Part shown: piece after piece, positions 19,887 through 55,804 of the stretch | How the letters are laid out: every line of letters begins with the position of its first letter | How positions within the stretch are numbered: position 1 is the first letter of the stretch | Sequence record: NC_061447.1 | DNA length: 64,000 nt | Strand: one strand, 5' to 3' | Made by a program: the position numbers and the translations under genes | Notes under the pieces: model-generated | What the model was told of the DNA's origin: nothing | Database searches by the model: none | What the model saw: only the letters and a program-made list of their open reading frames with translations

Positions 19887-19939
19887 GCAAATAATAGGCT
19901 GAAATAGCTCTTTATACGCACACGCGCCTGTGATACAAT
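19887..19939 (+). promoter_or_regulatory. box promoter P1
   Basis: GCAAATAA-TAGGCTGAAA-29 bp-(TGA)TACAAT. Confidence 0.8.
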
Positions 19940-19992
19940 ATATGCAGACGCTACATGTCGTAGCGCATACAACTCATGCTAAGGGGCATACA

Positions 19993-20697
19993 ATGAAAGC
20001 AGCAGATTTTGACAAAGCATTCAACGCGAAAGACGAAGCAACCTTAAACGCATACGCCGACAAAATTGTTGCGGCGCTTAACGCTCTTGGTCGCTATGAC
20101 CTGAAACTTCAAATCCTCTTCGGCACCGACCCGTACGGCGAGTGCCCTGATTTTGTGAATGACCCGAACGGTTTCCGCGTTACACAGAACGGCGAAGAAA
20201 TTTTCGATATCTACACGCCGACTGAAAAACAAATTGAAGCCGATTCGTCTGATGCTTTCGTATACGCTTCATTAACTGGCGTTGAAGCCACGAAGTGGGG
20301 CAAGATGGTAAGCGAAGATGACGTGACAGAAATCGCCGCTGACCTGAACGAAGAAATCGAACGTGCCAGCCGCGTGTTTGATGAATCTGATCGTCAGATG
20401 CTGCAAAAACTCGCCGACACTTTGAACGCTCGTATGGATCGTACCGATGCGCGAGTGATCGTAACGAACGGCGCCGAAGACGATCTGATTCTTATGGTAG
20501 TTGGCTATGACGCCGAAGAAGATGAAGTCAGTGATGAATACGGCTTCTTCTTATCGCTTCCGTATACTGATGTAGAAGGCACCGACGAGAAATACAGCCT
20601 GCACTACGCTGGCTACCCTGGCGTGAATGATCACTCATACAGCTCTGCTGACCTCGACGAAATTTCAGAAGAAATCGAGTCACTCGACCTGATGTAA
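19993..20697 (+). CDS. acidic hypothetical protein
   Basis: AAGGGG RBS; first gene after P1. Confidence 0.8.
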   Translation: MKAADFDKAFNAKDEATLNAYADKIVAALNALGRYDLKLQILFGTDPYGECPDFVNDPNGFRVTQNGEEIFDIYTPTEKQIEADSSDAFVYASLTGVEATKWGKMVSEDDVTEIAADLNEEIERASRVFDESDRQMLQKLADTLNARMDRTDARVIVTNGAEDDLILMVVGYDAEEDEVSDEYGFFLSLPYTDVEGTDEKYSLHYAGYPGVNDHSYSSADLDEISEEIESLDLM

Positions 20698-20708
20698 TCT
20701 ACACAAAG

Positions 20709-20753
20709 CTGGTCAAAAGCGCCATAGCAATGTGGCGCTCATTATCGTATTAT
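20709..20753 (+). promoter_or_regulatory. box promoter P2
   Basis: CTGGTCAAAA-29 bp-TATTAT. Confidence 0.65.
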
Positions 20754-20801
20754 GTAATCTCTAGCGCAATGACGCGCTCAACACAGAAAGAGGCAATAAC
20801 A

Positions 20802-21041
20802 ATGGCTGAGAAACAAGTAGTTCTTGATCTGATCGCAGACGTAGCATCACCTACAGAAGTTATCTTCGAAGATGGTCAATCGTCTAATGAGTGGCTGGCT
20901 CCATACGATCTGCGTCTGACCGTGTCGCAGAACGAAGGGCCGAACGGCTACCCCGAAGTGAACATCATCGGCGATGAAGACAATCTGAAACGCTTCTTGT
21001 CTGAACAAGACCTTGAAGGTTCGGTCGAAGAAGTGAAGTAA
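20802..21041 (+). CDS. small acidic hypothetical protein
   Basis: GAGG RBS. Confidence 0.75.
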   Translation: MAEKQVVLDLIADVASPTEVIFEDGQSSNEWLAPYDLRLTVSQNEGPNGYPEVNIIGDEDNLKRFLSEQDLEGSVEEVK

Positions 21042-21050
21042 AGTTGTTTG

Positions 21051-21081
21051 AGCGGGGCTTCGGCCTCGCTTCTTTTTTTTT
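21051..21081 (+). terminator. intrinsic terminator
   Basis: AGCGGGGC-TTCG-GCCTCGCT + long T tract. Confidence 0.9.
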
Positions 21082-21101
21082 ATTCTGCCTGAGATTAAAC
21101 G

Positions 21102-21605
21102 ATGAAAACATCATACCTGATTATTCGCCTCAACGCCAAAGATATGTATGACCGTGAATTTTTAATGCGCGGCTTTAACGCAAAACGCATTGAGAAAGTT
21201 ATCGGCGTTATCGCTATTGTAGGTGAAGGCCTGCTGACAGATGATTCTAAGATGTACCACCTGTCGCGTGTCGATATCAACCTGCTTGAGTCAGATACTC
21301 AACAAAGCTGGGCGCGTTTCAACTGGTCCTGTGTTGACGATAACCTCATTGATTCTGGCATGCGCCGTTTGCCAACTGAGTTGCGCGATAGAATTACGGC
21401 GATGCGCACTAATCGCATTTACTGCGAAGTCGATACGGCTATACCAGAAGCGTTTCGTGACTGTCATACTAAGTTTGTGTACAAGTCACGCCCCGCACGT
21501 CTGACCGTTAGTGACGAGAAAACAGGTACGCTCGACGAGTTCACTGTAGAAGAAATCGTAGCTAACCTGAAAACGCGCATTAAAGGCGTCACTATCGCTT
21601 TCTAA
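21102..21605 (+). CDS. hypothetical protein
   Basis: ORF in + strand run. Confidence 0.75.
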   Translation: MKTSYLIIRLNAKDMYDREFLMRGFNAKRIEKVIGVIAIVGEGLLTDDSKMYHLSRVDINLLESDTQQSWARFNWSCVDDNLIDSGMRRLPTELRDRITAMRTNRIYCEVDTAIPEAFRDCHTKFVYKSRPARLTVSDEKTGTLDEFTVEEIVANLKTRIKGVTIAF

Positions 21606-21667
21606 TCCTTGTCTGACTGTGGCGTTACGGCGCCACTTACTTCACAATCTAATTGAGAGAACATGCC

Positions 21668-22282
21668 ATGAACCTTATTAAAACTTTCTTCGCCAAACGC
21701 TCTTACGCTTCTCTGGCTGCTGGTAACTTTGCAATCGACGCCAAACACGTACAAGAGCTGGTGGAATGTGAGTGTATGATCGTACACGTAGACACTGGCC
21801 ACCGTAATGCGTTCGCGTTAAAGAACATCTCTATCACGCCTATCGACGAACACAACGTTCGCATTACGTTCGACCCGCTGACCGACGCACACGCTATGCC
21901 TGTGACTGTCATGCCGAAAGATCTGAAAGGCAGTATTGATGTGTACGACATGTACGCAGAAGACCTGAAAGACGTGCCGCGTTTCAACGTGTCGAATGAC
22001 GCATCAGGCAACAATCCTAATCTGCTGTCGCTTGACCTCGAAAGCCGCCAGCGTTTCACTCAATACTTCGGTGGCATGTGTACGCTGACAGACCTGTGCT
22101 TGACGCTGCACGACAAAGGCATTCACGTTGTCGATATTCACCATAACGTTAAGCAGCACGATCATGGCGTTGGCGTTTTCACTCAGCGCTACCGCACAGC
22201 ATTCGAACTCAACAAAGACAACGGCATTAAGCGCCACAACGACGACTATCCTGTTCTGGCTCGCATGACCGTATTAATGTAA
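21668..22282 (+). CDS. hypothetical protein
   Basis: GAGAG RBS-like; followed by terminator hairpin 22292-22314. Confidence 0.75.
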   Translation: MNLIKTFFAKRSYASLAAGNFAIDAKHVQELVECECMIVHVDTGHRNAFALKNISITPIDEHNVRITFDPLTDAHAMPVTVMPKDLKGSIDVYDMYAEDLKDVPRFNVSNDASGNNPNLLSLDLESRQRFTQYFGGMCTLTDLCLTLHDKGIHVVDIHHNVKQHDHGVGVFTQRYRTAFELNKDNGIKRHNDDYPVLARMTVLM

Positions 22283-22330
22283 ACACACATTGCCTCGCAT
22301 TGAGCGGGGCTTTTCTATTTGGAGAATGTT

Positions 22331-22591
22331 ATGGTATACGAACGCGAAGAACTCGAAGACATGCCGCTTGATGTGCTTTATCATTTGGCGAGCGCCAAAG
22401 GTCTTCTGGACGATCTGGACGATGATGACGATGTGCCTGATCGTGAAGTGCTGGTGGGCATGATTCTCGATGCTCAGAATGAAGACGAACAGGCAGAGCA
22501 AGATGCTGCCAACAAACAACGCGCCGAAGATGATCGCGACCCACGTATCAATCGTCGTGATGGTCAAGACGGCTCAGAGGATTATTGCTAA
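22331..22591 (+). CDS. small acidic protein with helix-extension-helix (Rho-N/SAP-like) motif
   Basis: ELEDMPLDVLYHLASAKGL...DREVLVGMIL; GGAG RBS. Confidence 0.65.
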   Translation: MVYEREELEDMPLDVLYHLASAKGLLDDLDDDDDVPDREVLVGMILDAQNEDEQAEQDAANKQRAEDDRDPRINRRDGQDGSEDYC

Positions 22592-22809
22592 TGACACCTA
22601 CTGAATTGAATGAGTATCTGCATCTGGTACTGACGCCTGTAGCTATGGCCTGGCGTGAGCAATTCCCTAAGAAGAAGCAAGCGATGGTCTCTATTAAGAC
22701 TGCGTACTCTTGCCGAATCAAATTCGTTGAGGACCGTGAAGTTGAAAAACGGTGGCAGGCCTTCTGTCGCACACACGGCCTCAAGAACGAGGAAACACTC
22801 GAAAGCTAA
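22591..22809 (+). CDS. hypothetical protein
   Basis: TAATG coupling. Confidence 0.65.
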   Translation: MTPTELNEYLHLVLTPVAMAWREQFPKKKQAMVSIKTAYSCRIKFVEDREVEKRWQAFCRTHGLKNEETLES

Positions 22810-22811
22810 AT

Positions 22812-22842
22812 AAAAGGGCTGCCATTGCTGGTGGCCCTTTTT
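22812..22842. terminator. intrinsic terminator
   Basis: AAAAGGGC...GCCCTTTTT. Confidence 0.85.
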
Positions 22843-22847
22843 CATTT

Positions 22848-22856
22848 CTGTAAATA
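22848..22856 (+). promoter_or_regulatory. CTGTAAATA motif
   Basis: Immediately after a terminator, 32 nt before ATG 22889. Confidence 0.55.
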
Positions 22857-22888
22857 TCTCGTACACAAACAACAATGCGAGATATACA

Positions 22889-23257
22889 ATGCGCCGCTTC
22901 GTTATCGTCTTCAACGTCAGTCAGGCAGAGCTTGATGACCGCCGCTTCTTTCAATCTAAGTTCAATATCGTTTCGTCACTGCGCCGCGCTCGCTGTGTCT
23001 TCCTCGTCGTTCGTGAAACCAAACAGGTGCTGTGTGTTTCAGAACTGACCTATCAACCGAGCGTCGAGCCAGGCATTCGTCAGGTAGACTTTGATGCGCC
23101 GCGTGACGTAACAGCATACGTGCTGCCTTTCGCAGAACTCACCGCAGCGATGATCAATAACTCACAAGACCTGAGCATTCGCTACTTTGGCCGCAGCCTT
23201 GATATGGACATGGACCAGGCCAAACGCTTTCACACTCAACTGGAGATTATCCCATGA
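22889..23257 (+). CDS. hypothetical protein
   Basis: ORF, ATGA-coupled to RHH gene. Confidence 0.7.
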   Translation: MRRFVIVFNVSQAELDDRRFFQSKFNIVSSLRRARCVFLVVRETKQVLCVSELTYQPSVEPGIRQVDFDAPRDVTAYVLPFAELTAAMINNSQDLSIRYFGRSLDMDMDQAKRFHTQLEIIP

Positions 23258-23499
23258 GTCAATCATTAGGCGCCTCACTTGGCGCTCGCTTCGCTGTCAC
23301 CTCTCAGGCTAACATTGAGAAGCGTAAGAAGCGCGACCCCAAAAACAGAACACTAAGCTGCGCCGCTACCTCAGCGCAGTATGATGCACTTGGTATGCTC
23401 GCCAACAAACTCAACGTGTCTCGTTCGCGCGCCGTAGAGATTGCAGTCGAAGAACTGTTGGCTAAGCACGGCGTTAAGGTGCAGACTGACAATGAGTGA
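23254..23499 (+). CDS. ribbon-helix-helix (CopG/MetJ/Arc-like) DNA-binding protein
   Basis: RTLSCAAT...YDALGMLANKLNVSRSRAVEIAVEELL. Confidence 0.7.
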   Translation: MSQSLGASLGARFAVTSQANIEKRKKRDPKNRTLSCAATSAQYDALGMLANKLNVSRSRAVEIAVEELLAKHGVKVQTDNE

Positions 23500-23854
23500 C
23501 ACGCACATCTACTGCAAGCTGTATGGCGTTCAGCACCGCTTAAAGATCACGGCCTTCAACTTCATGAAGCAGCCGAACATGATCACGGTTGATTCGTCTG
23601 ACGTGCTCAAGATGATGCCGCTGATTAATGTCGGTGCTGCATACGACACGTACACGCCATACAACGTACTCAAAGCGGGACGCGCTGACTTCAAAATCAA
23701 ATTGATGGAGCGCACTGATGCAAACGTCTGGCGCTATGAGTTCGAAGACTATCGTGGCCAACGCTTCGAAACGTACCTGATACGGAGACACTATGAAACG
23801 CCTCGGGATTGTAACGGTGTTGTCATTAAAGGACAAACAACCCAAATCATGTGA
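23492..23854 (+). CDS. hypothetical protein
   Basis: Overlaps RHH stop. Confidence 0.65.
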   Translation: MSDTHIYCKLYGVQHRLKITAFNFMKQPNMITVDSSDVLKMMPLINVGAAYDTYTPYNVLKAGRADFKIKLMERTDANVWRYEFEDYRGQRFETYLIRRHYETPRDCNGVVIKGQTTQIM

Positions 23855-24428: not shown

Positions 24429-24733
24429 ACGGAAGCTACTGGCGATTCGATATAGACGAACGTGCAGGCAACATCAATCTACCTCATCTTCCTGCTGACT
24501 ATACTGTGGTGATCAAAGACAACCTGACGCTACAGCGCACTACAGTCAAAATTGATGGCCTGACTATCGTGACCTCTCAGGGAAAGACCTGCGGTAGCCT
24601 TCAATTCATTACAGGCGCAAACATGCTTATCTGGTCCTCGTTCGAAGCATTCAGATTTACGCTGATTGTAGACGAGGTGAAGCATTACAGACTCAAAGCA
24701 GTCGACCGTCAATCTGACGAACTCTGCAAATAA
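24404..24733 (+). CDS. hypothetical protein
   Basis: ORF in run; stop codon lies in promoter P3. Confidence 0.65.
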   Translation: MVQSMGNLNGSYWRFDIDERAGNINLPHLPADYTVVIKDNLTLQRTTVKIDGLTIVTSQGKTCGSLQFITGANMLIWSSFEAFRFTLIVDEVKHYRLKAVDRQSDELCK

Positions 24734-24778
24734 CTGGTCAAAATAGCCATTCTTTTCAGTACCAGCTTATGATATACT
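24726..24778 (+). promoter_or_regulatory. box promoter P3
   Basis: GCAAATAA-CTGGTCAAAA-29 bp-(TGA)TATACT. Confidence 0.85.
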
Positions 24779-24825
24779 AAGAGCGAGCGCTATTGCTCAA
24801 AACAACACAAGCTGAGGAGCTTAAC

Positions 24826-25143
24826 ATGTCATCTTCTACTACTCTGACTTTCATCTTCCCAGAACTGACCTCTCTGGAAGTTTCTATCGGTAACGGCGTT
24901 GTCCCGCACTATTTGGGAATTGCCGAGAACATGGACAAGACGTTCAGCGATGTTAAGGCGCTACGTCTGATGCAAGACTCGAACGTCGTAGGCGTTATGA
25001 GCCGCTTCGATCAGTCCATGCTTAATATGCTGATCGCTCGCCACGAAACGCATGAGCATATTCGCTGTCGTGATGCCATTGAGCACGGCACCGAGCACTT
25101 CCCATCTACCTGTCTCTACCTGAAGGTAGCGCATCACCGCTAA
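24826..25143 (+). CDS. hypothetical protein
   Basis: GAGGAG RBS. Confidence 0.75.
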   Translation: MSSSTTLTFIFPELTSLEVSIGNGVVPHYLGIAENMDKTFSDVKALRLMQDSNVVGVMSRFDQSMLNMLIARHETHEHIRCRDAIEHGTEHFPSTCLYLKVAHHR

Positions 25144-30236: not shown

Positions 30237-30650
30237 ATGGAGAAGACGTACATGACACACTGGGGATCTCGGTATGTGAGATCTCCAACGGGCAAATGGT
30301 ACTCTGTTCATGGTCGCGAAGGTGCCTGGGTGACGAATCGCTACGGCACTTCATTCTATCGTAGCGGCACAGAGGTGTGGCGAGACATATCTCCTGCCTC
30401 TTGTAGGAATCTGGAGCGTGAGTTTCTCAAACGAACCCGCAATGACTTCAAGGATAATAAGAACAAGTACAACCACTGGGGTAAGGTAGTGCTGGTGATT
30501 GCACGTCAGTCGGAAGAAGAAAAGAACCCGCACACGTCAGAGCTTGCTGAGATGCTCGAAGCGCTTAGACAGACTTTCTATGGACAGAAGGTACAGCAAC
30601 TAAGCACAATTCTGGACGAAATAGGTCTTACAGACAGATATCGTTCGTGA
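30237..30650 (+). CDS. hypothetical protein
   Basis: ORF in run; 3' end contains promoter P4. Confidence 0.7.
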   Translation: MEKTYMTHWGSRYVRSPTGKWYSVHGREGAWVTNRYGTSFYRSGTEVWRDISPASCRNLEREFLKRTRNDFKDNKNKYNHWGKVVLVIARQSEEEKNPHTSELAEMLEALRQTFYGQKVQQLSTILDEIGLTDRYRS

Positions 30651-30656
30651 TATAAT
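30604..30656 (+). promoter_or_regulatory. box promoter P4 (within end of upstream CDS)
   Basis: GCACAATT-CTGGACGAAA-29 bp-(TGA)TATAAT. Confidence 0.8.
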
Positions 30657-30705
30657 AGAGATGAACGCTAGACACTCGTTTAGCTACTTACATGAGGACA
30701 TGTAT

Positions 30706-34885: not shown

Positions 34886-35202
34886 TGCTGCGTAAACTTT
34901 GGGTAGCTATTGGATTCAAATTTCCTACTGTGGCTGATGCTATGCGTAAACGTCAGGCATGTACACGCGTTGGCTATAAGAGCTACTGCGTTATGAATCG
35001 TGCTGGATTCGCAGAGGCATTTACTCACCACCTGCATGAGTATCGTGATTCCAGCCCTTCGCTGGCTGTGCTCAATAAACACAAGCATGAAGAAGTAGCG
35101 GCCAAGGCACAGCGTATGGACTATCCGTGCGTTGTTGTTTTTGCTGACGATGGCTTCTCTGCAATTGCAATTGATGCACCTACTATGGATCGCCACGTAT
35201 GA
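34885..35202 (+). CDS. hypothetical protein
   Basis: TAATG coupling. Confidence 0.7.
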   Translation: MLRKLWVAIGFKFPTVADAMRKRQACTRVGYKSYCVMNRAGFAEAFTHHLHEYRDSSPSLAVLNKHKHEEVAAKAQRMDYPCVVVFADDGFSAIAIDAPTMDRHV

Positions 35203-38357: not shown

Positions 38358-38415
38358 CAATCATGGGAGGCCCTTAACAGGGTTTCCCATTAGTCATTTC
38401 TGGAGCAAATTTCGC

Positions 38416-39396
38416 ATGAGATTCGGATTCGCCTGTAAGCTGCTTGACGCAAACGACAAACAACCATACACCAACAAGAGCCTTAGCTATAAACATTTCT
38501 CGGCGCTATCCGCACCTGACCAGCATGAAAAACTTTTGGCCGTTGTCGCACACAACCTGACTTCGTTACTCGACATGATAAAGCACGTTGGTCGTCTGCG
38601 TACCGACCTGCGTATGTTTCGAATCACAAGTGAGTTACTTCCGTTGTACACTCACCCGAAAGTGTTCCACATGTACATGCGCCATGACGTCGCAGCCTTA
38701 ACAGAAAAGATGTTAGCACTCTGTGGTGCAGCGGCACGTCGGCTTGATGTGCGACTATCTTTTCACCCAGGTCAGTTCACGGTACTTGCATCTGATCGTC
38801 CTGACGTGGTTGAGAACTCCATTCGTGAACTTGAGTACCATGCGTACTGTGCCTACCACATGGGATATGGCCGACGCTTTCAAGACTTCAAGATCAACAT
38901 TCACCTCAGCGGTAAACTTGGTGCAAAAGGCTTTCGTGCCGCACACCAGAAACTTTCTGACCACTGCCGCAAGATGTTGACCGTTGAGAACGACGAGATC
39001 ACTTCCAGCCTCGAAGACTGTTTAGAGCTGGCAGACATATGCCCGATCGTCCTCGACATTCATCATCACTGGGTTATGACTAACGAGTACATACAGCCGA
39101 CCGATGATCGTGTTAAGCGTGTCATTGACTCTTGGCGTGGCGTTCGACCGACTGCTCACTACTCTGTGTCGAAGCCTGAGTTCGTGCCGTCACGTGGTCT
39201 GCCTGATCAGAACAAGCTGTCCGCTAATCGTATGCAGTTACGCGCACACTCTGACTACTATCACAATGACGATGTAAACGACTGGGCCCTCAGCTTCACT
39301 GATTTTGACCTGATGTGTGAGTCAAAAGCTAAAAACAGGGCTAGAGTCAAACTGGCGTGTTTTAGCGTCAACTCTGCAAATAAATGGACAAAATGA
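38416..39396 (+). CDS. uvsE: UV-damage endonuclease (UvsE/UvdE)
   Basis: RFGFACK, MFRITSELLP, RLSFHPGQF, INIH, VENDE, VLDIHHH, HYS, AHSD, MCESKAK. Confidence 0.92.
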   Translation: MRFGFACKLLDANDKQPYTNKSLSYKHFSALSAPDQHEKLLAVVAHNLTSLLDMIKHVGRLRTDLRMFRITSELLPLYTHPKVFHMYMRHDVAALTEKMLALCGAAARRLDVRLSFHPGQFTVLASDRPDVVENSIRELEYHAYCAYHMGYGRRFQDFKINIHLSGKLGAKGFRAAHQKLSDHCRKMLTVENDEITSSLEDCLELADICPIVLDIHHHWVMTNEYIQPTDDRVKRVIDSWRGVRPTAHYSVSKPEFVPSRGLPDQNKLSANRMQLRAHSDYYHNDDVNDWALSFTDFDLMCESKAKNRARVKLACFSVNSANKWTK

Positions 39397-39429
39397 GGCT
39401 TGTTTGCGATATTCGACCTGTGATACACT
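39376..39429 (+). promoter_or_regulatory. box promoter P5 (overlaps UvsE C-terminus)
   Basis: GCAAATAA-ATGGACAAAA-30 bp-(TGA)TACACT. Confidence 0.8.
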
Positions 39430-39485
39430 GTTTATGAGCACTATCGCTCGTTTTTCTCATATAACTAGACAGAGGAAATAAGACA

Positions 39486-40504: not shown

Positions 40505-40733
40505 CGCAACCCATAAATACTACGGCGAAGCATACGAAGGTACGTGGCTGAAAGAGATTACACTCAACGGCCATCAAGTTACCTCAGCCGAGTTTAAAGA
40601 CTTCGAGAGCGCAAAGGAATGCGCGGACAAGCTGCATGAGGTTTGCGATATAGGGTGGATCGTATACAACGCCTTCTCTGAAAGAGCGATGTACGATACC
40701 CGCACAGAGCAAGGCGAGTCTGTAAATACATAG
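40482..40733 (+). CDS. hypothetical protein
   Basis: GGAGG RBS. Confidence 0.72.
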   Translation: MARYHVFSATHKYYGEAYEGTWLKEITLNGHQVTSAEFKDFESAKECADKLHEVCDIGWIVYNAFSERAMYDTRTEQGESVNT

Positions 40734-41625: not shown

Positions 41626-42824
41626 CCGAAGCTGAGATGAACATCGACCAAGTAACAAACGCCGCTAAAACCATTTTTCGTTCTGGTACCGCTGAACAGC
41701 GTGATGCACTTCGTGCTGTAGCCAACACGGTGCTTGCTGGTTCTGCTGCGCTGGCTTACGAAGGCACCGAGCCTGATGTTGAAACTACCTATCGTCTGCT
41801 GTCTAAGATTCAATTCTCTGGCGATGGCCAACAAATGCTACCTGCCGATGAAATCTACGCACTCGACACGTTGCTGCGTAAAGGCAAGAAAGCCACGTTC
41901 ATGCGCGCCGTAGAAAACATAGCACTGACTATGTACTGCACTGACCCACGTACTGCTGGTCGCGGTTATTGGCCAAAGAACAACAACGATCTGAATCTGC
42001 TATTGACCCGCGCTTTTATCTGGCTGGTTGCTCAGGAAGGTCTGGAGAACATTCTGGTCAAAGACACTTCTGTAGTGAGCCATACGCGTCTGGCGCAGTT
42101 CCTGATCGCAACGCAGGTTGCAGGTAAAGACGAAGGTGCGCTGCGTCACTTCACGCTTTATCATCCGCATCAAGATACAGGCAACATCTATTCCTGCAAC
42201 GTGCTACCTGATGAATATATCGCTTCATTGAAAGCGGCGCGTCGTGCGAATCGTCCTGAAGAATACGATCAGGTTCGTGGAATGTCGTTCAATCAACTCG
42301 CAGATCTGTGTGAGCGCCTGAATGTTATTGGTCCTAACTCTGTGCCAAAACACTCATGTAGCTGTGATGATGAAGATTGCGAATGTGAGGACGATGATTA
42401 CCGCAGCCGAGAAGATTACGAAGGCGACACCGAAGAACTGCTTGAAGATTTTTACGGTAAGTTCGGTGACCCTGACGACGACGAAGAACCAGAACAAGAT
42501 ATCTGGCAGCCTGACGTATCGCTCATGGAAGTCGAAATCGATCTGCCTGCCGTAACGTTACCGCGTCCTGCGCCGGATGCTTATGTAGGCCGAGCGCCTT
42601 CTCGCTACAAGAAGCCAGTTCAGAAAACATCGCGTACTAAATTGCTCCTTACCCGTGAGCAACAAATCTGGCACACGATTGATACTGATAACAAAGAGTT
42701 CGGTGATCGTCGTTTTGCTATTACGCTCGTATCACGCCACACGTGCGGCGTAAGTCATGCAATCGCCACAGCCCGTGAAGCACTCGCAGTTGCTGCCGTG
42801 CTTATGGACGAAAGTAGCAAATAA
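41622..42824 (+). CDS. hypothetical protein with acidic insert
   Basis: 400 aa; CSCDDEDCEC acidic segment. Confidence 0.8.
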   Translation: MTEAEMNIDQVTNAAKTIFRSGTAEQRDALRAVANTVLAGSAALAYEGTEPDVETTYRLLSKIQFSGDGQQMLPADEIYALDTLLRKGKKATFMRAVENIALTMYCTDPRTAGRGYWPKNNNDLNLLLTRAFIWLVAQEGLENILVKDTSVVSHTRLAQFLIATQVAGKDEGALRHFTLYHPHQDTGNIYSCNVLPDEYIASLKAARRANRPEEYDQVRGMSFNQLADLCERLNVIGPNSVPKHSCSCDDEDCECEDDDYRSREDYEGDTEELLEDFYGKFGDPDDDEEPEQDIWQPDVSLMEVEIDLPAVTLPRPAPDAYVGRAPSRYKKPVQKTSRTKLLLTREQQIWHTIDTDNKEFGDRRFAITLVSRHTCGVSHAIATAREALAVAAVLMDESSK

Positions 42825-42869
42825 CTGGTCAAACTAGCGCTTCGATTCGAGGCGCTTTTCTGCTATAAT
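42817..42869 (+). promoter_or_regulatory. box promoter P6 (terminator hairpin inside spacer)
   Basis: GCAAATAA-CTGGTCAAAC-29 bp-(TGC)TATAAT. Confidence 0.85.
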
Positions 42870-42937
42870 CATAGCTAGAGCAATATTGCTCTCAACGTCA
42901 TTTTTTAACCATACGTTTATAACGGGAATTGTCATTT

Positions 42938-46779: not shown

Positions 46780-46784
46780 AACAC

Positions 46785-46815
46785 AACGGGAGACCTTAAC
46801 TGGTTTCCCGTTTTT
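46785..46815 (+). terminator. intrinsic terminator
   Basis: AACGGGAGACC...GGTTTCCCGTTTTT. Confidence 0.8.
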
Positions 46816-46846
46816 CATTTCTGCGCAAATTTTTGAGACTACGACG

Positions 46847-47815
46847 ATGACTAATCAATTCCAACAAATCCCTGCAGGTAAAACCCTTCTGCCATTCTAT
46901 TCTTCTGTTGCACTTAACGTCTACTTCAACGAGCGTATCAAACGTCTTGGCCTGACTAAGGTGTGGGAATACGTAGAGCGCAACAACTGTCCTGCGTTCG
47001 GCGACGATCAGATAATGGAAGCTCTGCACTATCATTCGACCGTACACATGAAGCACGTAACGGCTCTTGCGCTTTGGTTGCTTGACTGCGAAGCTATTCA
47101 CGATTGGCAATACAGAAACGGCGCAGTCCCATTAGCTATTGCCTGTATGTTCCACGACATGAATCATACTCTCGGTCAGAAAGACGATGCGTACAATGTC
47201 CAGCAAGCTGTTGCCGCATTGGAGAAAGCTGCTCACCATGAACTGGCCGACGCTGTGCTGATCGATAACTGCGATATTGCGGCCGACCTGATTCGTGTTA
47301 CGCAATTCCCCTACTCGGAAGACCGCGTGCCGAAGAATATGATTGAGCGTTGTATTCGTGACGCGGATATTCTCTACGGCATGCAGCCGTTTGTTATCGA
47401 CCACGTTATGTTTGGTTTACGTGAAGAAGTGAATAGCAATCCTGATATGCCTTATACCTTCACACAGAAAGAGTGGGCTGCTGGTCGTGTTGACTTCCTG
47501 CGTAGCGTTGAGATGTTTACGCAGACCGGCAAAGACGCTATGGACTGGTTGCTTGATGCAGAAAACGATCACAACCATCAGGCGAAGATTGAAAGCTGGA
47601 TGACAGACAACATTGATTTTATTGTTACCAGTGCTCGCCGCGTCAAAGCGAACGATGTTCTGTTTATCGACACACCAGAAGATACGTTGAAAGCTCGTCG
47701 CTTGATTGAGCGTGTTGCTGACATGGGTGTGGGTTTCAACGTCTATTTCAATGACGGCACTTCGGTTCATCTGCGTAATGGCGAGAGTTGTGTGGTCTGC
47801 GAAAGACGCAAATAA
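46847..47815 (+). CDS. HD-superfamily metal-dependent phosphohydrolase
   Basis: YHSTVH, ACMFHDMNH, IRDADIL. Confidence 0.85.
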   Translation: MTNQFQQIPAGKTLLPFYSSVALNVYFNERIKRLGLTKVWEYVERNNCPAFGDDQIMEALHYHSTVHMKHVTALALWLLDCEAIHDWQYRNGAVPLAIACMFHDMNHTLGQKDDAYNVQQAVAALEKAAHHELADAVLIDNCDIAADLIRVTQFPYSEDRVPKNMIERCIRDADILYGMQPFVIDHVMFGLREEVNSNPDMPYTFTQKEWAAGRVDFLRSVEMFTQTGKDAMDWLLDAENDHNHQAKIESWMTDNIDFIVTSARRVKANDVLFIDTPEDTLKARRLIERVADMGVGFNVYFNDGTSVHLRNGESCVVCERRK

Positions 47816-47860
47816 TAGGATGAAATAGGCGGTATACGAACCACGTGCCTGTGATATAAT
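47808..47860 (+). promoter_or_regulatory. box promoter P7
   Basis: GCAAATAA-TAGGATGAAA-29 bp-(TGA)TATAAT. Confidence 0.85.
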
Positions 47861-47892
47861 ACGCATAGACACACATAATAGAGAGAACTCGA

Positions 47893-50028: not shown

Positions 50029-50064
50029 CCTGAGCGCTTACGGGCGCTCTACTGGAGAAACATT

Positions 50065-51600: not shown

Positions 51601-51635
51601 TTGTCCAACCATACCTAACATTGTAGGGAACAAAA

Positions 51636-52070
51636 ATGAAATTCGAACAAAACATTCTGGTAGTAAATCGTATTCAACTGGCTATGAACGACGAGCTGGT
51701 CAAGAAGCTGACTGATGCTGCGCGTGATGATCGTGGCGCATCGGCTATGTCACTGGCTTATGCGACCGCAATCGTTATGGCTAAACTTCAACATAAGATT
51801 ACCTTCGCTTTGGCTGAGGAGAATCCTGAGGCCTGTGTTCGTGCTGAACTACTCTGGACTGATCATGGCTCAGTCACCACAAGTGCGCTATTCCTCATAG
51901 CGTCCGCAGCCGACGAAGAAGTATTAAACCACGTCGAAGACCACGACTACCTGAACCATCTGCACACAATCAAACGTGTAGCAGAGGAGAACGGATTTAA
52001 CCTCCATGTCTTCCCCGTGGCTGCTAACTTCCCGTTCAAGCGTACTGAAATCCCGGCTAATATGCAGTGA
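51636..52070 (+). CDS. hypothetical protein
   Basis: AGGGA RBS. Confidence 0.75.
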   Translation: MKFEQNILVVNRIQLAMNDELVKKLTDAARDDRGASAMSLAYATAIVMAKLQHKITFALAEENPEACVRAELLWTDHGSVTTSALFLIASAADEEVLNHVEDHDYLNHLHTIKRVAEENGFNLHVFPVAANFPFKRTEIPANMQ

Positions 52071-52078
52071 GGTGATCT

Positions 52079-52378
52079 ATGACTGATAAACTGACATTGG
52101 TACCGAATGTCGCTATCGTCCTGAAGATGAACGAACGCCGCGCATTCTTAGGGCCGAAAGAAGATGGGTTTGTCTATCTGGCAAGCAAGGAAGCACTCGA
52201 TAAATTCGAGGCGCATATCCTGCGCTACCGCAGCCGCGAAGAATACTCTGAGATAGAGGAACGTGAATTACGCGCTCTGACAGACGAGGGTGTTCTGGCT
52301 CTGAGTCATGAAGTCAAAACAGACCCAGACAGACCGTGGCTGTGGACAAAGACAGACTTCCGCAAGAAGCTCTGGTAA
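52079..52378 (+). CDS. hypothetical protein
   Basis: GAGGTG RBS. Confidence 0.75.
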   Translation: MTDKLTLVPNVAIVLKMNERRAFLGPKEDGFVYLASKEALDKFEAHILRYRSREEYSEIEERELRALTDEGVLALSHEVKTDPDRPWLWTKTDFRKKLW

Positions 52379-52431
52379 GCATAAAACTGGACAAAACAGC
52401 GGTAGTATCTGAAAGCGTCCTATGATACAAT
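52379..52431 (+). promoter_or_regulatory. box promoter P8
   Basis: GCATAAAA-CTGGACAAAA-29 bp-(TGA)TACAAT. Confidence 0.85.
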
Positions 52432-52484
52432 AGAAGCGTAGCTTGTGCTGCGCTTTTATAACATATGTCTGAGGAGACAACGAA

Positions 52485-52949
52485 ATGATGAACGAAACTC
52501 AAGCAACCCCATCTGATATCGAATTGCAGGACCGCATGATGGACGCCGCTGTCCAGAAAGTTATTGAACTGACCCCTGAGTGGATTGACGTGGCAGCCGC
52601 AGGCCTTCGCCTGTACCTGACCGTGTGTGACCAGCTTGGTGGTCCGATTCCTGAAATGCGTTTCGTACACAACAACCGTCCATGCAAACTCCAGTTCAAT
52701 TTGAACGAAGTTGCCGAAGGTTCTGAGTTTGTTGCGAACGATATCGATCATGCCAAGCAGATGGAAATCTGTGAGGCGATTCTCGCTACAGCCGAAGCGA
52801 ACGAAGATGGTCACTCGCTAATGGACCTTGCGATTTGTTCTGGCCGCCTGTTTATGATCGGCTACGATGGTCTTGCTGGCACGGTTAGCAAAGTTTGCTT
52901 CCGCTTCGCCAAAAAGAACTACGTCATGAATCTGGTTGAGGCTAAATAA
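52485..52949 (+). CDS. hypothetical protein
   Basis: GAGGAG RBS; first gene after P8. Confidence 0.8.
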   Translation: MMNETQATPSDIELQDRMMDAAVQKVIELTPEWIDVAAAGLRLYLTVCDQLGGPIPEMRFVHNNRPCKLQFNLNEVAEGSEFVANDIDHAKQMEICEAILATAEANEDGHSLMDLAICSGRLFMIGYDGLAGTVSKVCFRFAKKNYVMNLVEAK

Positions 52950-52950
52950 C

Positions 52951-53646
52951 ATGAAACTCTCACCGTTTATGTTGAAACGCAGTAAGCTGGCTCCTGAAGT
53001 ATTTGCACTCGTTCGTGAAAACGAAGTGCTCGCCTCATTCAGACCTAGAAAGTTTCTGGAAGCTCTCCAGGCAGTTGTTAAAGAGCACGGTCTGAAAGAA
53101 GTCGATGTTGTATGGCGTGACGGCTCCCGTACCGTAGAGCACTTAGTTGTCTCGCTCACCCGTGAGCTGGTATCAACTGATACTATCATGAACCGATACA
53201 ACATGTGCCTGATGCTTCGCTCGCAGGGTATTGCGGCCAGTCTTGCCGTACCTGTCGATATTCGCACGATGTATGATGAACACGGTCCGATGATCAGTGA
53301 GATTCACATTGACCCTGAAATCGCAGACAAGCTGGCTGTGGCCCTCGCACCAAAACATCCCCTGTATGCGGATGCTCATAACGGGTATGAGGAGGATGAT
53401 GACGCCATCGACGACGAGGACGACTTTAACGACGATGAATGTATCGACGATGAAGAAGACTTCGACATGGAAGATGCTAACCCTGAAATCGAGCGTATGA
53501 TGATTTGCAGTTGGGGATATCGCGCCGAAGACTGGGCAATCACTCTGAACGATGATCAGGTTCAGGAAGTACACAGCCTTGAGGTTGGTGTTGACCCTGA
53601 CATTGAACTGCCACTCGCACCTGATGCGAAGGACAAATACTTCTAA
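52951..53646 (+). CDS. hypothetical protein with acidic segment
   Basis: GAGG RBS. Confidence 0.75.
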   Translation: MKLSPFMLKRSKLAPEVFALVRENEVLASFRPRKFLEALQAVVKEHGLKEVDVVWRDGSRTVEHLVVSLTRELVSTDTIMNRYNMCLMLRSQGIAASLAVPVDIRTMYDEHGPMISEIHIDPEIADKLAVALAPKHPLYADAHNGYEEDDDAIDDEDDFNDDECIDDEEDFDMEDANPEIERMMICSWGYRAEDWAITLNDDQVQEVHSLEVGVDPDIELPLAPDAKDKYF

Positions 53647-53837
53647 TGAAAACCACTAACGAAATGATCAAAGAGTTGCGACAACGCGGCGAGCTTGTTA
53701 TTGAAGAACGCCAGAAAGACGCAGTGCCCGACTTAACGTTCACGCTTGATTGTCTGTGTCTCACATACAAGAAGCGGGAAGTGGAAACAACCAAGCGCGG
53801 CCGCGTTATCACAATCAAGTTGACGAACATGCACTAA
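53646..53837 (+). CDS. small hypothetical protein
   Basis: TAATG coupling. Confidence 0.6.
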   Translation: MKTTNEMIKELRQRGELVIEERQKDAVPDLTFTLDCLCLTYKKREVETTKRGRVITIKLTNMH

Positions 53838-53978
53838 CAATCAGTTTGGCTCGCCCGTCCAGAAATGCTCACCCCCAATGAGGCGCCCCATCGCAGAGGC
53901 GTGACGACGCGGGTCCTTTTTGAAGCGTACTGAGTAGTGCGCTGCATAAAGTACCTAAAACCAAACAGGAGGCTGTTA

Positions 53979-54392
53979 ATGAAGTTCAACGAAGCAAGTA
54001 AAGATGCACAGGTCATTCTCATGGGTGGTGCACTCGCTGGTGTGATTGAAGTCTTCGGACGCGACGAAGAAGACGAAGGCAAAAAGCTGATCGAAACGGC
54101 ATTAAGCCAGATAGGTCTGACGTTCGACGAGTTCTGTGTGCTGATGACAGATATGGCGCCTGAGGTAGAAGTTGAGGTCGAAGCGATTCTCGGTGAGCAT
54201 AAAGCTGTACGTGTTGCTGATGCAGACGATGACTTCGATGATGAAGACCTCGACACTGCGGAAGAACGACCAGGCAATCTCAACGATGACGGCCGTACCG
54301 ATGAAAACGGTTGGCAGAACCTCGACGAAGGTGAAGATGAAGTCTGCTTCTCCTGCCATAAAGAGCATTGCGAATGCAATCGTGTGGGGTAA
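53979..54392 (+). CDS. acidic hypothetical protein
   Basis: AGGAGG RBS; C-terminal CFSC..HCEC. Confidence 0.75.
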   Translation: MKFNEASKDAQVILMGGALAGVIEVFGRDEEDEGKKLIETALSQIGLTFDEFCVLMTDMAPEVEVEVEAILGEHKAVRVADADDDFDDEDLDTAEERPGNLNDDGRTDENGWQNLDEGEDEVCFSCHKEHCECNRVG

Positions 54393-54396
54393 TCAA

Positions 54397-54612
54397 ATGA
54401 GCCGACGTCCTACACAAGATGAAGTGAGCGGCCAGATAGCTGCCGCCGAAGAACAACGCTATAATGAGCAAATCGCTCAGTACGACGACTGGACAGACGA
54501 CGAGCTGGCCGACGCTGTAGAAGCTAACGAGCTTGTGGACGAAGATGACGACGCAAGCAACTACAGCCGCGAAGCGCTGATTCGAATGCTTCTGGCAGAT
54601 CGTCGCTTCTAA
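54397..54612 (+). CDS. small acidic protein with HeH-like motif
   Basis: YDDWTDDELADAVEANEL...SREALIRML. Confidence 0.65.
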   Translation: MSRRPTQDEVSGQIAAAEEQRYNEQIAQYDDWTDDELADAVEANELVDEDDDASNYSREALIRMLLADRRF

Positions 54613-54665
54613 GCATAAATCTGGACAAAATGAGGATTGTCTCAAAACAGCGTCCGTGATACAAT
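54613..54665 (+). promoter_or_regulatory. box promoter P9
   Basis: GCATAAAT-CTGGACAAAA-29 bp-(TGA)TACAAT. Confidence 0.85.
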
Positions 54666-54667
54666 AT

Positions 54668-54860
54668 AGAGACAGCGAGACATGTTCTCTCTGTGATGTG
54701 CCTATAACGTCTTGACCGTGTGTTTATTTTTTCCCGGGCACACGGTCCTTTTTAAAGCTGCTTCCTGTGAGGCTGTTTTAAAAAGGGTTCGATACCCTTT
54801 GAGCGCGTCGGGCTTTACGCGGTTTCCGCCTGCCGTGCTCTCATGCTAAACCGCAAAGGA
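54668..54860 (+). ncRNA. candidate structured ncRNA or 5' leader with tRNA T-arm mimic
   Basis: Stacked hairpins 54714-54747, 54747-54786, AAGGG-TTCGATA-CCCTT at 54783-54799, GCGGTTT/AAACCGC 54819-54854; no ORF. Confidence 0.45.
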
Positions 54861-54867
54861 AATAGAT

Positions 54868-55698
54868 ATGCCTAATACTTCACGCCCTAAGACAGAAGAC
54901 AAATTCTCCCGCGCTCGCGCCGCTAAGAACTCGCCAAAGCGCGTTAAAGGCAAAAAGCCTAGCGAGCGTCCTGAGAACGAAGGTGAGAAGAAACGCCCAA
55001 CACCACGCGGGCCGTCTTCCGCTAAACCACGTCAACTGCCTCCTGGCTACGGTTACAAATCGAAAGCTACGGGCGAACGTCTCCCGGACACGCAGACGAA
55101 AATTCGTGACGAGGAACGCGTGTTCAATCTGGTTCACGCAATCTTATCAGCATGGAAGGTTACGACTGACGCGGAAGCGGTTGCTACGGGTATCATCAAA
55201 GTGTCTCGTCGTAAGATTGAAGGCGCCTTGCGTGACCTCAAGAATACGCGCTTCACTAAAATCCCGTCGCTGGTTAACGATATTCTGACCGATATGGACC
55301 TCTACAAAGAGTTCGGTCAGTGGGTGTATGTCGAACACGATTCTCCTGATTGGATTTTCGTTCGACTGCCTGAAAACAGTACGCAAGTGATTCGTGCTGA
55401 TATCAGTTCTGATCGTATTGGCGAAACGTCTGCTGCCGTGACAACCAGAACAGAAGTTCTGCTTGACGGTGCGCACCTCGAAGAAGATGAAGAGGAGATT
55501 CCTGAGAACGTCGAGTATGGCGACGAAGAAGAAGAATCTGACGAAGAAGAAGAATCTGACGAAGAAGAAGATGATAACGCCGCTGCTGTTGCTAAGATGC
55601 GCAAGTATCTGGTAGCTGCGCAAATCATCAAGCCAGAAGCTGCCGTCAAGCTGTCTGACAATGACGTAGTGAGGTTGTATAGCTACTACCGAGCGTAA
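54868..55698 (+). CDS. hypothetical protein, basic N-terminus and acidic C-terminus
   Basis: AAGGA RBS. Confidence 0.8.
   Translation: MPNTSRPKTEDKFSRARAAKNSPKRVKGKKPSERPENEGEKKRPTPRGPSSAKPRQLPPGYGYKSKATGERLPDTQTKIRDEERVFNLVHAILSAWKVTTDAEAVATGIIKVSRRKIEGALRDLKNTRFTKIPSLVNDILTDMDLYKEFGQWVYVEHDSPDWIFVRLPENSTQVIRADISSDRIGETSAAVTTRTEVLLDGAHLEEDEEEIPENVEYGDEEEESDEEEESDEEEDDNAAAVAKMRKYLVAAQIIKPEAAVKLSDNDVVRLYSYYRA
55522..55571 (+). repeat. 18-bp coding tandem repeat (GACGAAGAAGAAGAATCT x~2.8)
   Basis: Encodes DEEEES repeats. Confidence 0.8.
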
Positions 55699-55750
55699 GC
55701 ACTAACGAGCGGGGCAGTGAAATATAGCTGCCCTGCTATCTGCGAAGTAT

Positions 55751-55804
55751 GCAGAAAACTGGACAAAATCGTGGTTGTTATCTGCCGGCCACCTATGCTA
55801 TAAT
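55751..55804 (+). promoter_or_regulatory. box promoter P10
   Basis: GCAGAAAA-CTGGACAAAA-30 bp-(TGC)TATAAT. Confidence 0.85.

What the first reader, a model, noticed from the sequence alone, without database searches (positions are those of the whole stretch)
19887..55804. Ten-copy promoter family: conserved -59/-42 box plus extended -10 at fixed spacing, no -35
Seen: at 19887, 20709, 24726, 30604, 39376, 42817, 47808, 52379, 54613 and 55751. An 8-nt GCA-A-rich element (absent in P2) precedes a 10-nt box, (C/A)TGG(T/A)C(A/G)AA(A/C) in eight copies and TAGG(C/A)TGAAA in two. Then come exactly 29 bp (30 in two) and a sigma70 -10 hexamer (TATAAT/TACAAT/TATACT/TACACT/TATTAT) with TGn in nine. The spacers share no TTGACA. 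The element often overlaps upstream coding ends: AAA-TAA Lys-stop in three genes, and the last residues of UvsE and of 30237. Known: -40 to -60 is the alphaCTD/UP-element and class I activator zone; T4 MotA boxes sit at -30 instead. Inference: a phage-specific promoter architecture, either a sequence-specific UP element for immediate-early expression or the site of a phage activator or modified RNAP, driving the accessory/anti-defence operons.
Basis: partly seen in the sequence, partly recalled or inferred. Interest (0 to 1): 0.8.

Follow-up and report, generated by a model that had tools for sequence, protein, structure and literature searches.

The report
Conserved early-promoter family, jumbo phage
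A jumbo phage of the fire-blight bacterium starts its early gene block from twelve near-identical promoters that pair a host-type extended -10 with an unusual, position-locked upstream element, and this design is kept across five phage genera but has not been described in the literature I could search.

Summary
The window is Erwinia jumbo phage pEa_SNUABM_33 (Alexandravirus), record positions 186001-250000.

**The family in this genome**
- All ten sites exist as described.
- A two-block weight matrix scores them 29.6-45.5 bits; everything else scores 15 or less.
- Two more copies lie just beyond the window. None was found in the other 186 kb.
- The invariant positions alone give 6 hits against 0.03 expected.

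**Conservation**
- Syntenic copies occur in Alexandravirus relatives, Y3, Yoloswag and JA11.
- Between orthologues the box (-59..-41) is as conserved as the extended -10 (0.79 each). The spacer is at 0.46.

**New details**
- The element reaches -66.
- A T(W)G remnant of a -35 sits at the correct 17-18 bp, so "no -35" is only partly right.
- A small 5' stem-loop follows the predicted start in most copies.
- The XRE and RHH candidates are missing from genomes that carry the family.

**Best reading**
- These are host sigma70 early promoters boosted by an upstream module in the alpha-CTD zone.
- The module is partly UP-like (8.7 of 14 consensus positions, phased A-tracts).
- Its invariant G/C positions and phage-specific "dialects" leave room for a phage-specified reader.

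Verdict: a new variant of a known kind.

The parts
19880..19965 (+). P1. Upstream module 19880-19907 (box 19895-19904, TAGG variant), -35 remnant 19911-19916, extended -10 19929-19939, predicted start ~19946, 5' hairpin 19949-19965. Drives gp250; 47-nt leader.
   Evidence: also picked up by the generic sigma70 scan
20694..20778 (+). P2, the weakest copy. Degenerate distal element, box 20709-20718, -10 TATTAT without TG, terminator-like hairpin inside the spacer, 5' hairpin 20763-20778. Drives gp251.
   Evidence: (29.6 bits)
24719..24798 (+). P3. Box 24734-24743, extended -10 24768-24778, start ~24785, hairpin 24785-24798. The stop codon of gp260 lies inside the distal element. Drives gp261.
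   Evidence: (45.5 bits)
30597..30684 (+). P4. Box 30612-30621, extended -10 30646-30656 (it holds the stop codon of gp273), start ~30663, hairpin 30667-30684. Drives gp274 and the radical-SAM gene.
39369..39451 (+). P5. Box 39384-39393, 30-bp spacing, extended -10 39419-39429, start ~39436, hairpin 39434-39451. The UvdE gene gp290 ends in the spacer. Drives gp291.
42810..42892 (+). P6. Box 42825-42834, intrinsic-terminator-like hairpin 42836-42856 embedded between box and -10, extended -10 42859-42869, start ~42876, hairpin 42877-42892. Drives gp298.
47801..47867 (+). P7. Box 47816-47825 (TAGG variant), extended -10 47850-47860, start ~47867. The only copy without a 5' hairpin; 26-nt leader. 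Drives gp307.
52372..52454 (+). P8. Box 52387-52396, extended -10 52421-52431, start ~52438, strong hairpin 52435-52454. Drives gp315.
54606..54694 (+). P9. Box 54621-54630, -35 remnant TTGTCT 54637-54642, extended -10 54655-54665, start ~54672, hairpin 54672-54694. A 196-nt leader with a terminator-like hairpin precedes gp320.
55744..55827 (+). P10. Box 55759-55768, 30-bp spacing, -35 remnant TTGTTA 55775-55780, extended -10 55794-55804, start ~55811, hairpin 55812-55827. Drives gp321.
9622..10659 (+). gp241, a highly divergent phage sigma factor. It lies outside the family block and is itself preceded by a class II motif at 9579-9589.
9579..9589 (+). Example of the second promoter-like class (ATCTGTAAATA). 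Other intergenic copies in the window start near 15806, 22846 and 40718. The family's distal unit (-61..-53) is a near-copy of this core.

Best explanation
These are the phage's early promoters, used by the host sigma70 RNA polymerase.

- Core recognition is through a near-consensus extended -10 (T-17, TG at -15/-14, TAyAAT) plus a vestigial -35, T(T/A)G, placed 17-18 bp upstream.
- The weak -35 is compensated by a position-locked upstream module spanning -66 to -39. Its A-tracts, centred near -64, -54 and -43, are one helical turn apart and lie where the two alpha C-terminal domains dock on UP elements.
- Transcription would start at a purine 7 nt after the hexamer. The RNA begins with a 4-8 bp stem-loop, which I infer protects the 5' end.
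- Copies often start at, or overlap, the stop codon of the preceding gene. Two carry the preceding operon's terminator inside the spacer. The unit is therefore a composite stop / terminator / promoter / 5'-hairpin cassette heading each early operon.

Shown: the anatomy, its non-randomness, its restriction to one 53-kb block, and purifying selection on each block of the motif across five genera.
Inferred: use by host sigma70, alpha-CTD docking, early timing and hairpin function.
For: - Anatomy and significance.
- Restriction to record positions 205.9-258.6 kb, + strand only, 26-268 nt upstream of start codons.
- Pooled profile of 59 sites: T-12, A-11 and T-7 essentially invariant; TG in 53 of 59; T-35 in 57 of 59; pyrimidine at -1 and purine at +1.
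- The generic sigma70 scan finds no excess of canonical promoters in the block. The only hits with TG and a correctly placed first hexamer are family members.
- Orthologue footprint: box 0.79, extended -10 0.79, -66..-60 0.73, -40..-33 0.71, spacer 0.46, flanks 0.47.
- Profile self-similarity peaks at offsets of 10-12 bp.
- The published 17-bp UP consensus aligns best at about -58..-42, with 8.7 of 14 matches against a background of 4.5 +/- 1.7.
- Spacing wobbles 29/30 (28) between orthologues, as a flexibly tethered contact would allow.
- 5' hairpin: mean dG -7.0 against -4.2 kcal/mol, p = 6e-11, starting at -2..+6 in 55 of 59.
- T4 early promoters are a precedent for phage UP/-35/TGn/-10 promoters with extra conserved upstream positions (PMC2988021).
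- gp241 gives only a sub-threshold Sigma70_r2 hit.
Against: - No transcript data exist for this clade, so start sites and timing are unverified.
- The module is only 66% A+T. It has invariant non-A/T positions (C-58, G-49, G-48, mostly G-59) that the UP consensus does not explain.
- Phages sharing one host use different box "dialects": AD1 against JA11 on Dickeya solani, and Y3 against pEa_SNUABM_1 on E. amylovora. That is unexpected if a host protein sets the optimum.
- The distal unit resembles the phage's own class II motif.
- How the sigma gene, which lies upstream of the family block, is first expressed is unexplained.
Confidence: 0.5

Rival explanations
1. The box is the binding site of a dedicated, clade-specific transcription factor, or of a phage-modified alpha subunit. 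The factor would be either delivered with the virion or made very early. It would act like a class I activator on host sigma70 polymerase at promoters that are poor in -35 and rely on an extended -10.
For: - Invariant G/C positions about 10 bp apart (GCA at -59..-57, GG at -49/-48), as conserved as the -10.
- The asymmetric two-part layout fits a protein reading two successive major grooves.
- Genome-specific dialects differ between phages that share a host, as expected if reader and site co-evolve within the phage.
- The T4 Alt precedent: an injected enzyme changes alpha and favours some early promoters.
Against: - No candidate protein is identified. XRE gp265 and RHH gp257 are excluded as general readers. 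The DksA-like protein, conserved throughout, belongs to a family that acts on the polymerase rather than on DNA.
- Both box variants co-exist in one genome, so the code that is actually read is short (G, G/T, AAA).
- The 29/30-bp wobble between orthologues is unusual for a rigid activator contact.
Confidence: 0.3
2. The upstream module is a temporal switch. Its distal unit is a decoy or secondary site for whatever machinery reads the phage's class II (CTGTAAATA) promoters. Later in infection that machinery would occupy -61..-53, and would either shut the early promoter off or re-initiate through it.
For: - At -61..-53 the mean mismatch to the class II core is 3.2, against a background of 6.7. 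Ten of 59 sites are within one mismatch, against a background frequency of 0.03%.
- Class II is a real, strand-co-oriented class (36 of 36). The Lu11 authors annotated the same motif as a putative middle/late promoter.
- In JA11, two family members have a perfect class II core at the -10 position.
Against: - Position -58 is C in all 59 sites where class II has T, so no family member carries a true class II core.
- The preceding TCT is present in only some copies.
- 109 of 111 class II cores have no box.
- The resemblance may simply reflect a shared A-tract.
Confidence: 0.1
3. The promoters are read by the phage sigma gp241, not by host sigma70. The box would then serve as a displaced -35-type element for that sigma.
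For: - gp241 homologues are present in every genome that carries the family.
- A PaBG homologue was assigned to the sigma70 family by HHpred (PMC7412058).
Against: - gp241 has no Pfam or NCBIfam hit above threshold. The only trace is Sigma70_r2 at E = 0.054, so sharing sigma70's exact extended -10 specificity is unlikely.
- The gene content downstream of the family is early-type.
- Two other motif classes are available for gp241.
- No family copy was found in the 75 kb of Lu11 examined, although Lu11 encodes the sigma (inconclusive).
Confidence: 0.07
4. The upstream similarity has no reader. It would be maintained by recombination or gene conversion between copies of a mobile promoter cassette, as proposed for PeSL elements of T4-type phages.
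For: - The dialect is homogenised within genomes; 8 of 11 copies in pEa_SNUABM_1 read CTGGACAAAA.
- The gene next to a promoter is often the one that differs between relatives.
- The composite promoter plus stem-loop layout sits in an ORFan-rich block.
Against: - Conservation is position-specific, not block-wise. Spacers between box and -10 are unrelated among paralogues and diverge between orthologues (0.46), while single positions stay invariant across five genera.
- In the hypervariable P9-P10 interval both promoters survive in the gene-less relatives, so the deletions did not run from repeat to repeat.
Confidence: 0.08

Closest known systems
T4-type early promoters (UP / -35 / TGn / -10; Hinton 2010, PMC2988021)
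   Same: A multi-copy family of host-sigma70 promoters at the head of phage early operons. Both have an extended -10, a conserved region in the alpha-CTD zone, and additional consensus positions beyond the host elements.
   Different: T4 early promoters have an excellent -35 and A/T-rich upstream tracts. Here the -35 is reduced to T(W)G. The upstream module has invariant G/C positions, sits at a fixed 29-30 bp from the -10, and shows genome-specific dialects. No Alt-like enzyme has been identified.
PeSL cassettes of T4-type phages (Arbiol 2010, PMC2839356; Comeau 2014, PMC4122927)
   Same: Repeated composite early promoter plus stem-loop motifs in ORFan-rich, plastic regions. They begin at the stop codon of the upstream gene, and the stem-loop lies either between the promoter elements or just before or after the start.
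   Different: PeSL promoters match the full sigma70 consensus and have only an A/T-rich upstream region. Here I found no sequence evidence for repeat-to-repeat recombination. The stem-loop is mostly in the first 25 nt of the transcript.
UP element of bacterial promoters (17-bp consensus quoted in PMC2412878)
   Same: Same zone (-40 to -60). The best register of the consensus is -58..-42. A-tracts lie near -43 and -54, matching the two subsites.
   Different: Only 8.7 of 14 specified positions match. The centre (CTGG) and the GCA are not A/T. Conservation is far higher than in natural UP elements.
Lu11 'putative middle/late promoter' (annotated in NC_017972.1)
   Same: Identical core to the class II motif found here, and similar to the family's distal unit. 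It occurs in the same clade of sigma-encoding jumbo phages.
   Different: It is a separate class: compact, roughly 35-45 nt upstream of start codons where intergenic, genome-wide on both arms, and without the box or a sigma70 -10.

Membership tests
sigma70 extended -10 promoter | TGn immediately upstream of a -10 hexamer with T-12, A-11 and T-7 | tested here: met
   TG in 9 of 10 window copies and 53 of 59 pooled sites. T-12 in 58 of 59; A-11 and T-7 in 59 of 59. Part of this is ascertainment, because the searches required TA...T.
sigma70 extended -10 promoter | Transcription starts about 7 nt after the hexamer and depends on host sigma70 | not testable with these tools
   The sequence shows pyrimidine at -1 and purine at +1 in most copies. 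No RNA data are available.
UP element | Located between about -40 and -60, with subsites near -42 and -52 | tested here: met
   The conserved module spans -66..-39. The best register of the published consensus is -58..-42.
UP element | A/T-rich sequence matching the SELEX consensus | tested here: inconclusive
   8.7 of 14 specified positions match, against a background of 4.5 +/- 1.7 (95th percentile 7, 99th percentile 9). A+T is 66%. G/C is invariant at -58, -49 and -48.
UP element | Bound by the alpha C-terminal domain | not testable with these tools
   Needs footprints or a structure.
PeSL cassette | Repeated early promoter combined with a stable stem-loop | tested here: met
   A hairpin begins within a few nucleotides of the predicted start in 55 of 59 copies, p = 6e-11. 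Hairpins lie inside the spacer at 20701 and 42817.
PeSL cassette | Concentrated in plastic, ORFan-rich regions and flanking variable genes | tested here: met
   All 12 copies lie in one 53-kb block of mostly hypothetical genes. Promoter-adjacent genes vary at P1, P3, P4, P7 and P9.
PeSL cassette | Full sigma70 -35/-10 consensus promoter | tested here: not met
   The -35 is reduced to T(W)G. The generic scan recovers only 4 of 10 copies, at 9-10 of 12 matches.
PeSL cassette | Mediates recombination between copies (mini-circles, chimeric repeats) | tested here: inconclusive
   In the only interval examined, both promoters are retained after loss of the genes. Circles cannot be tested here.
T4 MotA/AsiA middle promoter (sigma appropriation) | Activator box centred at -30 that replaces the -35 | tested here: not met
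   The box is centred near -46 to -50, and a -35 remnant is retained.
T4 MotA/AsiA middle promoter (sigma appropriation) | Phage encodes MotA and AsiA homologues | not tested
   Only 21 window proteins were screened against Pfam, PHROGs or both. None was annotated as such.

The most novel reading that the evidence does not exclude
The box is read by a phage-specified component: a virion-delivered or very early DNA-binding protein, or an alpha subunit altered by the phage. That component co-evolves with the promoters, which would explain the genome-specific dialects. The same short code (CTG-n-AAA-n-A) is reused in the class II promoters. Early and middle transcription of this jumbo-phage clade would then be linked by one recognition system, a new way of redirecting host sigma70 polymerase comparable in kind to T4 sigma appropriation.
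Probability: 0.2. Interest if true: 0.8.

Novelty: new variant of a known kind. Interest (0 to 1): 0.55.

Why it matters
Nothing is known about how this clade of about 260-kb phages (Alexandravirus, Sasquatchvirus, Yoloswagvirus, Salmondvirus; relatives of Lu11 and PaBG) programmes transcription. They have no polymerase of their own and encode one very divergent sigma.

The family gives a precise, testable map of the early operons. Together with the two other motifs seen here, it outlines a three-class programme.

The upstream module is as constrained as the -10, yet it is not a textbook UP element. If host alpha-CTD reads it, it widens what counts as a UP element. If a phage factor reads it, that is a new activator system for promoters that rely on an extended -10.

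The cassettes are also compact, strong-looking promoter parts for Erwinia and Dickeya genetics, and useful landmarks for annotating these phages, several of which are used in fire-blight biocontrol cocktails.

Tried and rejected
1. Whole-genome matrix scan in the sandbox. I replaced the scan with the DNA search patterns on those loci.
2. XRE gp265 and RHH gp257 as box readers: rejected by presence/absence. The relatives were examined only as 50-kb syntenic stretches.
3. Phage sigma as reader: judged unlikely.
4. Clean 10-bp direct repeat in the module: the profile shows a 10-12 bp periodicity rather than one sharp offset. I therefore describe it as phased A-tracts.
5. Repeat-to-repeat recombination, PeSL-style: not supported in the P9-P10 interval.
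6. Box paired with class II cores: only 2 of 111, both in JA11.
7. Rfam: no hit in the window or in the long leaders.
8. Lu11: no family copy in the 75 kb examined. Its genome paper is not held.
9. IMG/VR strict-pattern scan: only 261-268 kb Alexandravirus-type contigs.
10. Host transcription-factor sites (Fis, IHF, CRP, sigma54, MarA/SoxS-type, PhoB-type) were considered only from recollection. I did not test them and give them no weight.
11. The genome contigs and metagenome scans were not used. A pattern loose enough to catch host promoters would give thousands of chance hits.

Full report
**Identity and setting**

The window is 100% identical to Erwinia phage pEa_SNUABM_33 (NC_061447.1, 263,237 bp, genus Alexandravirus), record positions 186001-250000.

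The genome has a plus-strand arm running from 183.7 kb across the origin to 45.2 kb, and a minus-strand structural arm covering 45.3-183.6 kb. No RNA polymerase is annotated. One sigma factor, gp241 (window 9622-10659), is encoded. It belongs to phrog_17569, has no Pfam hit at E 0.01 or better, shows only a sub-threshold Sigma70_r2 trace (E = 0.054), and matches nothing in the PDB by sequence.

**The observation**

- A two-block weight matrix built from them scores them 29.6-45.5 bits. The best other position in 77 kb, both strands, scores 15.0.
- The same scan finds two further copies beyond the window. One is at record 254499, before the topoisomerase II large subunit gene. The other is at record 258649, before gp336.
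- Pattern searches on the remaining 186 kb find no full copy. There is one loose, probably chance, hit on the minus strand of L004.
- A pattern of the invariant positions alone gives 6 hits against 0.03 expected.

The family therefore has 12 members, all on the plus strand, confined to 205.9-258.6 kb. Each sits 26-268 nt (typically 40-60) upstream of a start codon.

**Refined anatomy**

I pooled sites from pEa_SNUABM_33, phB78, pEa_SNUABM_1, Y3, Yoloswag and JA11. AD1 was left out of the statistics because it is nearly identical to pEa_SNUABM_33. This gave 59 sites, rising to 64 once five more JA11 copies were added.

Some columns were search criteria and are biased upwards: GCA.A, GG, AA, TA...T. 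Several strongly conserved positions were not selected for:

- T at -35 in 57 of 59 sites, followed by T/A at -34 and G at -33. This T is locked to the box rather than to the -10, so the extra base in 30-bp copies lies between the -35 remnant and the -10.
- AA at -65/-64 and T at -62.
- T at -17.
- Pyrimidine at -1 and purine at +1.
- A conserved +1..+7 segment.

The architecture, from upstream to downstream, is:

- AA-n-T at -65..-62
- GCA-a-A-t-a-a at -59..-52
- c-T-GG-w-C-a-AAA-T at -51..-41
- a G-rich step
- T(W)G at -35
- a 17-18 bp spacer
- T-r-TG-n-TAyAAT

"No -35" is thus only partly right. The generic sigma70 scan recovers four members through this remnant and shows no excess of canonical promoters in the block: 16 found against 22.7 expected, and 17 against 21.0.

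The profile is self-similar at offsets of 10-12 bp. This reflects A-tracts near -64, -54 and -43 separated by G-containing steps.

**5' hairpin**

The first 32 nt of the predicted transcripts fold more stably than controls. Mean dG is -7.0 kcal/mol, against -5.0 for segments 150 nt downstream and -4.2 for random 32-mers (p = 1e-4 and 6e-11). The first paired base lies between -2 and +6 in 55 of 59 copies.

Only P7 in the window lacks a hairpin. Two copies (20701, 42817) also carry a terminator-like hairpin between box and -10.

**Conservation**

Syntenic copies exist in:

- AD1 (10), phB78 (11) and pEa_SNUABM_1 (11), all Alexandravirus
- Y3 (11, Sasquatchvirus)
- Yoloswag (10, Yoloswagvirus)
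- JA11 (9, Salmondvirus)

Spacing is 29 bp in most, 30 bp in 7 of 11 copies in pEa_SNUABM_1, and 28 bp in two Y3 copies.

Identity per block in 63 orthologue pairs:

| Block | Identity |
|---|---|
| Box (-59..-41) | 0.79 |
| Extended -10 | 0.79 |
| -66..-60 | 0.73 |
| -40..-33 | 0.71 |
| +1..+25 | 0.65 |
| Spacer | 0.46 |
| Outer flanks | 0.47 |

Selection on the box is therefore as strong as on the -10, and it is not a by-product of shared ancestry. A strict pattern scan of IMG/VR returns only 261-268 kb contigs of this type.

**Dialects**

Consensus boxes differ by genome:

| Genome(s) | Host | Box consensus |
|---|---|---|
| Alexandravirus (incl. AD1, pEa_SNUABM_1) | D. solani / E. amylovora | CTGGaCaAAA |
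| Y3 | E. amylovora | tAGGctgAAA |
| Yoloswag | E. amylovora | TGGTCAAAA |
| JA11 | D. solani | gTGTCCAAAA |

AD1 and JA11 share Dickeya solani as host. Y3, Yoloswag and pEa_SNUABM_1 share E. amylovora. The constant parts are GCA.A, G at -49, and AAA at -44..-42. pEa_SNUABM_33 itself carries two dialects, so one reader must accept both.

**Comparison with the UP element**

The 17-bp consensus quoted in PMC2412878 aligns best at about -58..-42. That is the canonical register for subsites near -52 and -42. It matches 8.7 of 14 specified positions, against a background of 4.5 +/- 1.7 with a 99th percentile of 9. The flanks match and the CTGG centre does not. The module is 66% A+T against 53% for the genomes.

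**Other promoter-like classes**

- **Class II.** The 8-mer TCTGTAAA occurs 36 times in the genome, and every copy is co-oriented with the local genes on both arms. The window holds 7, against 2.3 expected. Most intergenic copies lie about 35-45 nt upstream of start codons of replication or recombination genes and of the sigma gene itself. The Lu11 record annotates the same core as a putative middle/late promoter.
- **Class III.** Structural-gene intergenic regions instead share a TAATTTCA-like motif.
- **Resemblance to the family.** The family's distal unit at -61..-53 is a fixed-position near-copy of the class II core: 10 of 59 sites are within one mismatch, against a background of 0.03%. Even so, -58 is always C where class II has T. 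Only 2 of 111 class II cores carry a box, and both are JA11 family members whose -10 lies inside a class II core.

**Candidate readers**

- XRE gp265 is found only in pEa_SNUABM_33, AD1 and phB78.
- RHH gp257 is missing from the Yoloswag and JA11 stretches.
- The DksA/TraR-type zinc-finger protein gp279 is present in all (Day 2018 lists the XRE as unique to AD1).
- All three genes lie inside family-driven operons, so none could serve the first round of transcription unless it is packaged in the virion.

**Plasticity**

The gene next to a promoter often differs between relatives:

- an extra gene after P3 in pEa_SNUABM_1
- gp274 absent after P4 in AD1
- gp307 absent or only 53-55% identical after P7
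- 0, 1, 2 or 3 annotated ORFs between P9 and P10

In phB78 and Y3 both promoters survive 190-246 bp apart, so those losses were not repeat-to-repeat deletions.

**Interpretation**

The most economical reading is a family of host-sigma70 early promoters, analogous to the T4 UP/-35/TGn/-10 early promoters and packaged like PeSL cassettes. They differ in having a degenerate -35 and a lineage-specific, position-locked upstream module.

I rate direct alpha-CTD docking as the single most likely mechanism for the module. The support is its position, its phasing, the partial UP match, and the 1-bp spacing tolerance. The invariant G/C positions and the host-independent dialects keep a phage-specified reader as a serious rival. 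The class II resemblance suggests a possible link to the temporal switch.

**Literature**

No accessible paper on Alexandra, AD1, the JA phages, Y3, Yoloswag, the SNUABM series or PaBG describes these promoters. The Y3 and Lu11 genome papers are not held, so an earlier brief mention cannot be excluded.

I also used the sigma70 hexamers in a script. I stopped when I noticed it.

None of those recollections is used as evidence. The UP consensus used is the one quoted by a paper. The sigma70 hexamers are those printed by the scan tool and by the finding.

Noticed in passing
window 9579-9589, 15806-15816, 22846-22856, 40718-40728; genome-wide in L001-L006: A second promoter-like class, aaTCTGTAAAta: 36 exact 8-mer copies in the genome, all co-oriented with the local genes. 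It precedes the sigma, SSB, DNA polymerase and clamp-loader genes. The core is identical to the 'putative middle/late promoter' annotated in Pseudomonas phage Lu11.
   Followed up: partly
L039 (record 96001-134000), upstream of gp137, gp143, gp151 and gp160; window 17751-17824 and 18086-18183: A third recurrent intergenic motif (GCTAATTTCA-like) lies upstream of structural genes and after some terminators. It is a possible late-promoter class. No statistics were done.
   Followed up: no
window 54672-54867: The P9 transcript would have a 196-nt leader containing an intrinsic-terminator-like hairpin (about 54710-54760) before gp320. In Y3 and phB78 the downstream genes are gone, but a promoter plus roughly 190-250 bp remains. 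This may be a small RNA or an attenuator. No Rfam match.
   Followed up: partly
L002 23708-23975 (record 258708-258975): The twelfth family promoter is followed by a 268-nt leader with strong predicted structure before gp336. No Rfam match.
   Followed up: partly
L036 (JA11) 34925-34990 and 38368-38430: In JA11, two family members have their -10 embedded in a perfect class II core (TCTGTAAAC). They are possible dual-class promoters.
   Followed up: partly
window 12012-14531: gp243 (839 aa) matches a UvsX-like recombinase profile of about 500 positions over its whole length. That implies roughly 350 extra residues, either an inserted domain or an intein-like element.
   Followed up: no
L004 33448-34772 (record 83448-84772): A 1.3-kb stretch of the structural arm has no annotated gene. 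One class II core lies at its edge (84763) and a second lies just inside gp118 (84966).
   Followed up: no
window 21042-21101, 22810-22888, 38358-38415, 46780-46846: Many intrinsic terminators inside the early operons are followed within 10 nt by a TTCTG...AAAT motif. This looks like a recurrent terminator-plus-motif composite distinct from the family.
   Followed up: no
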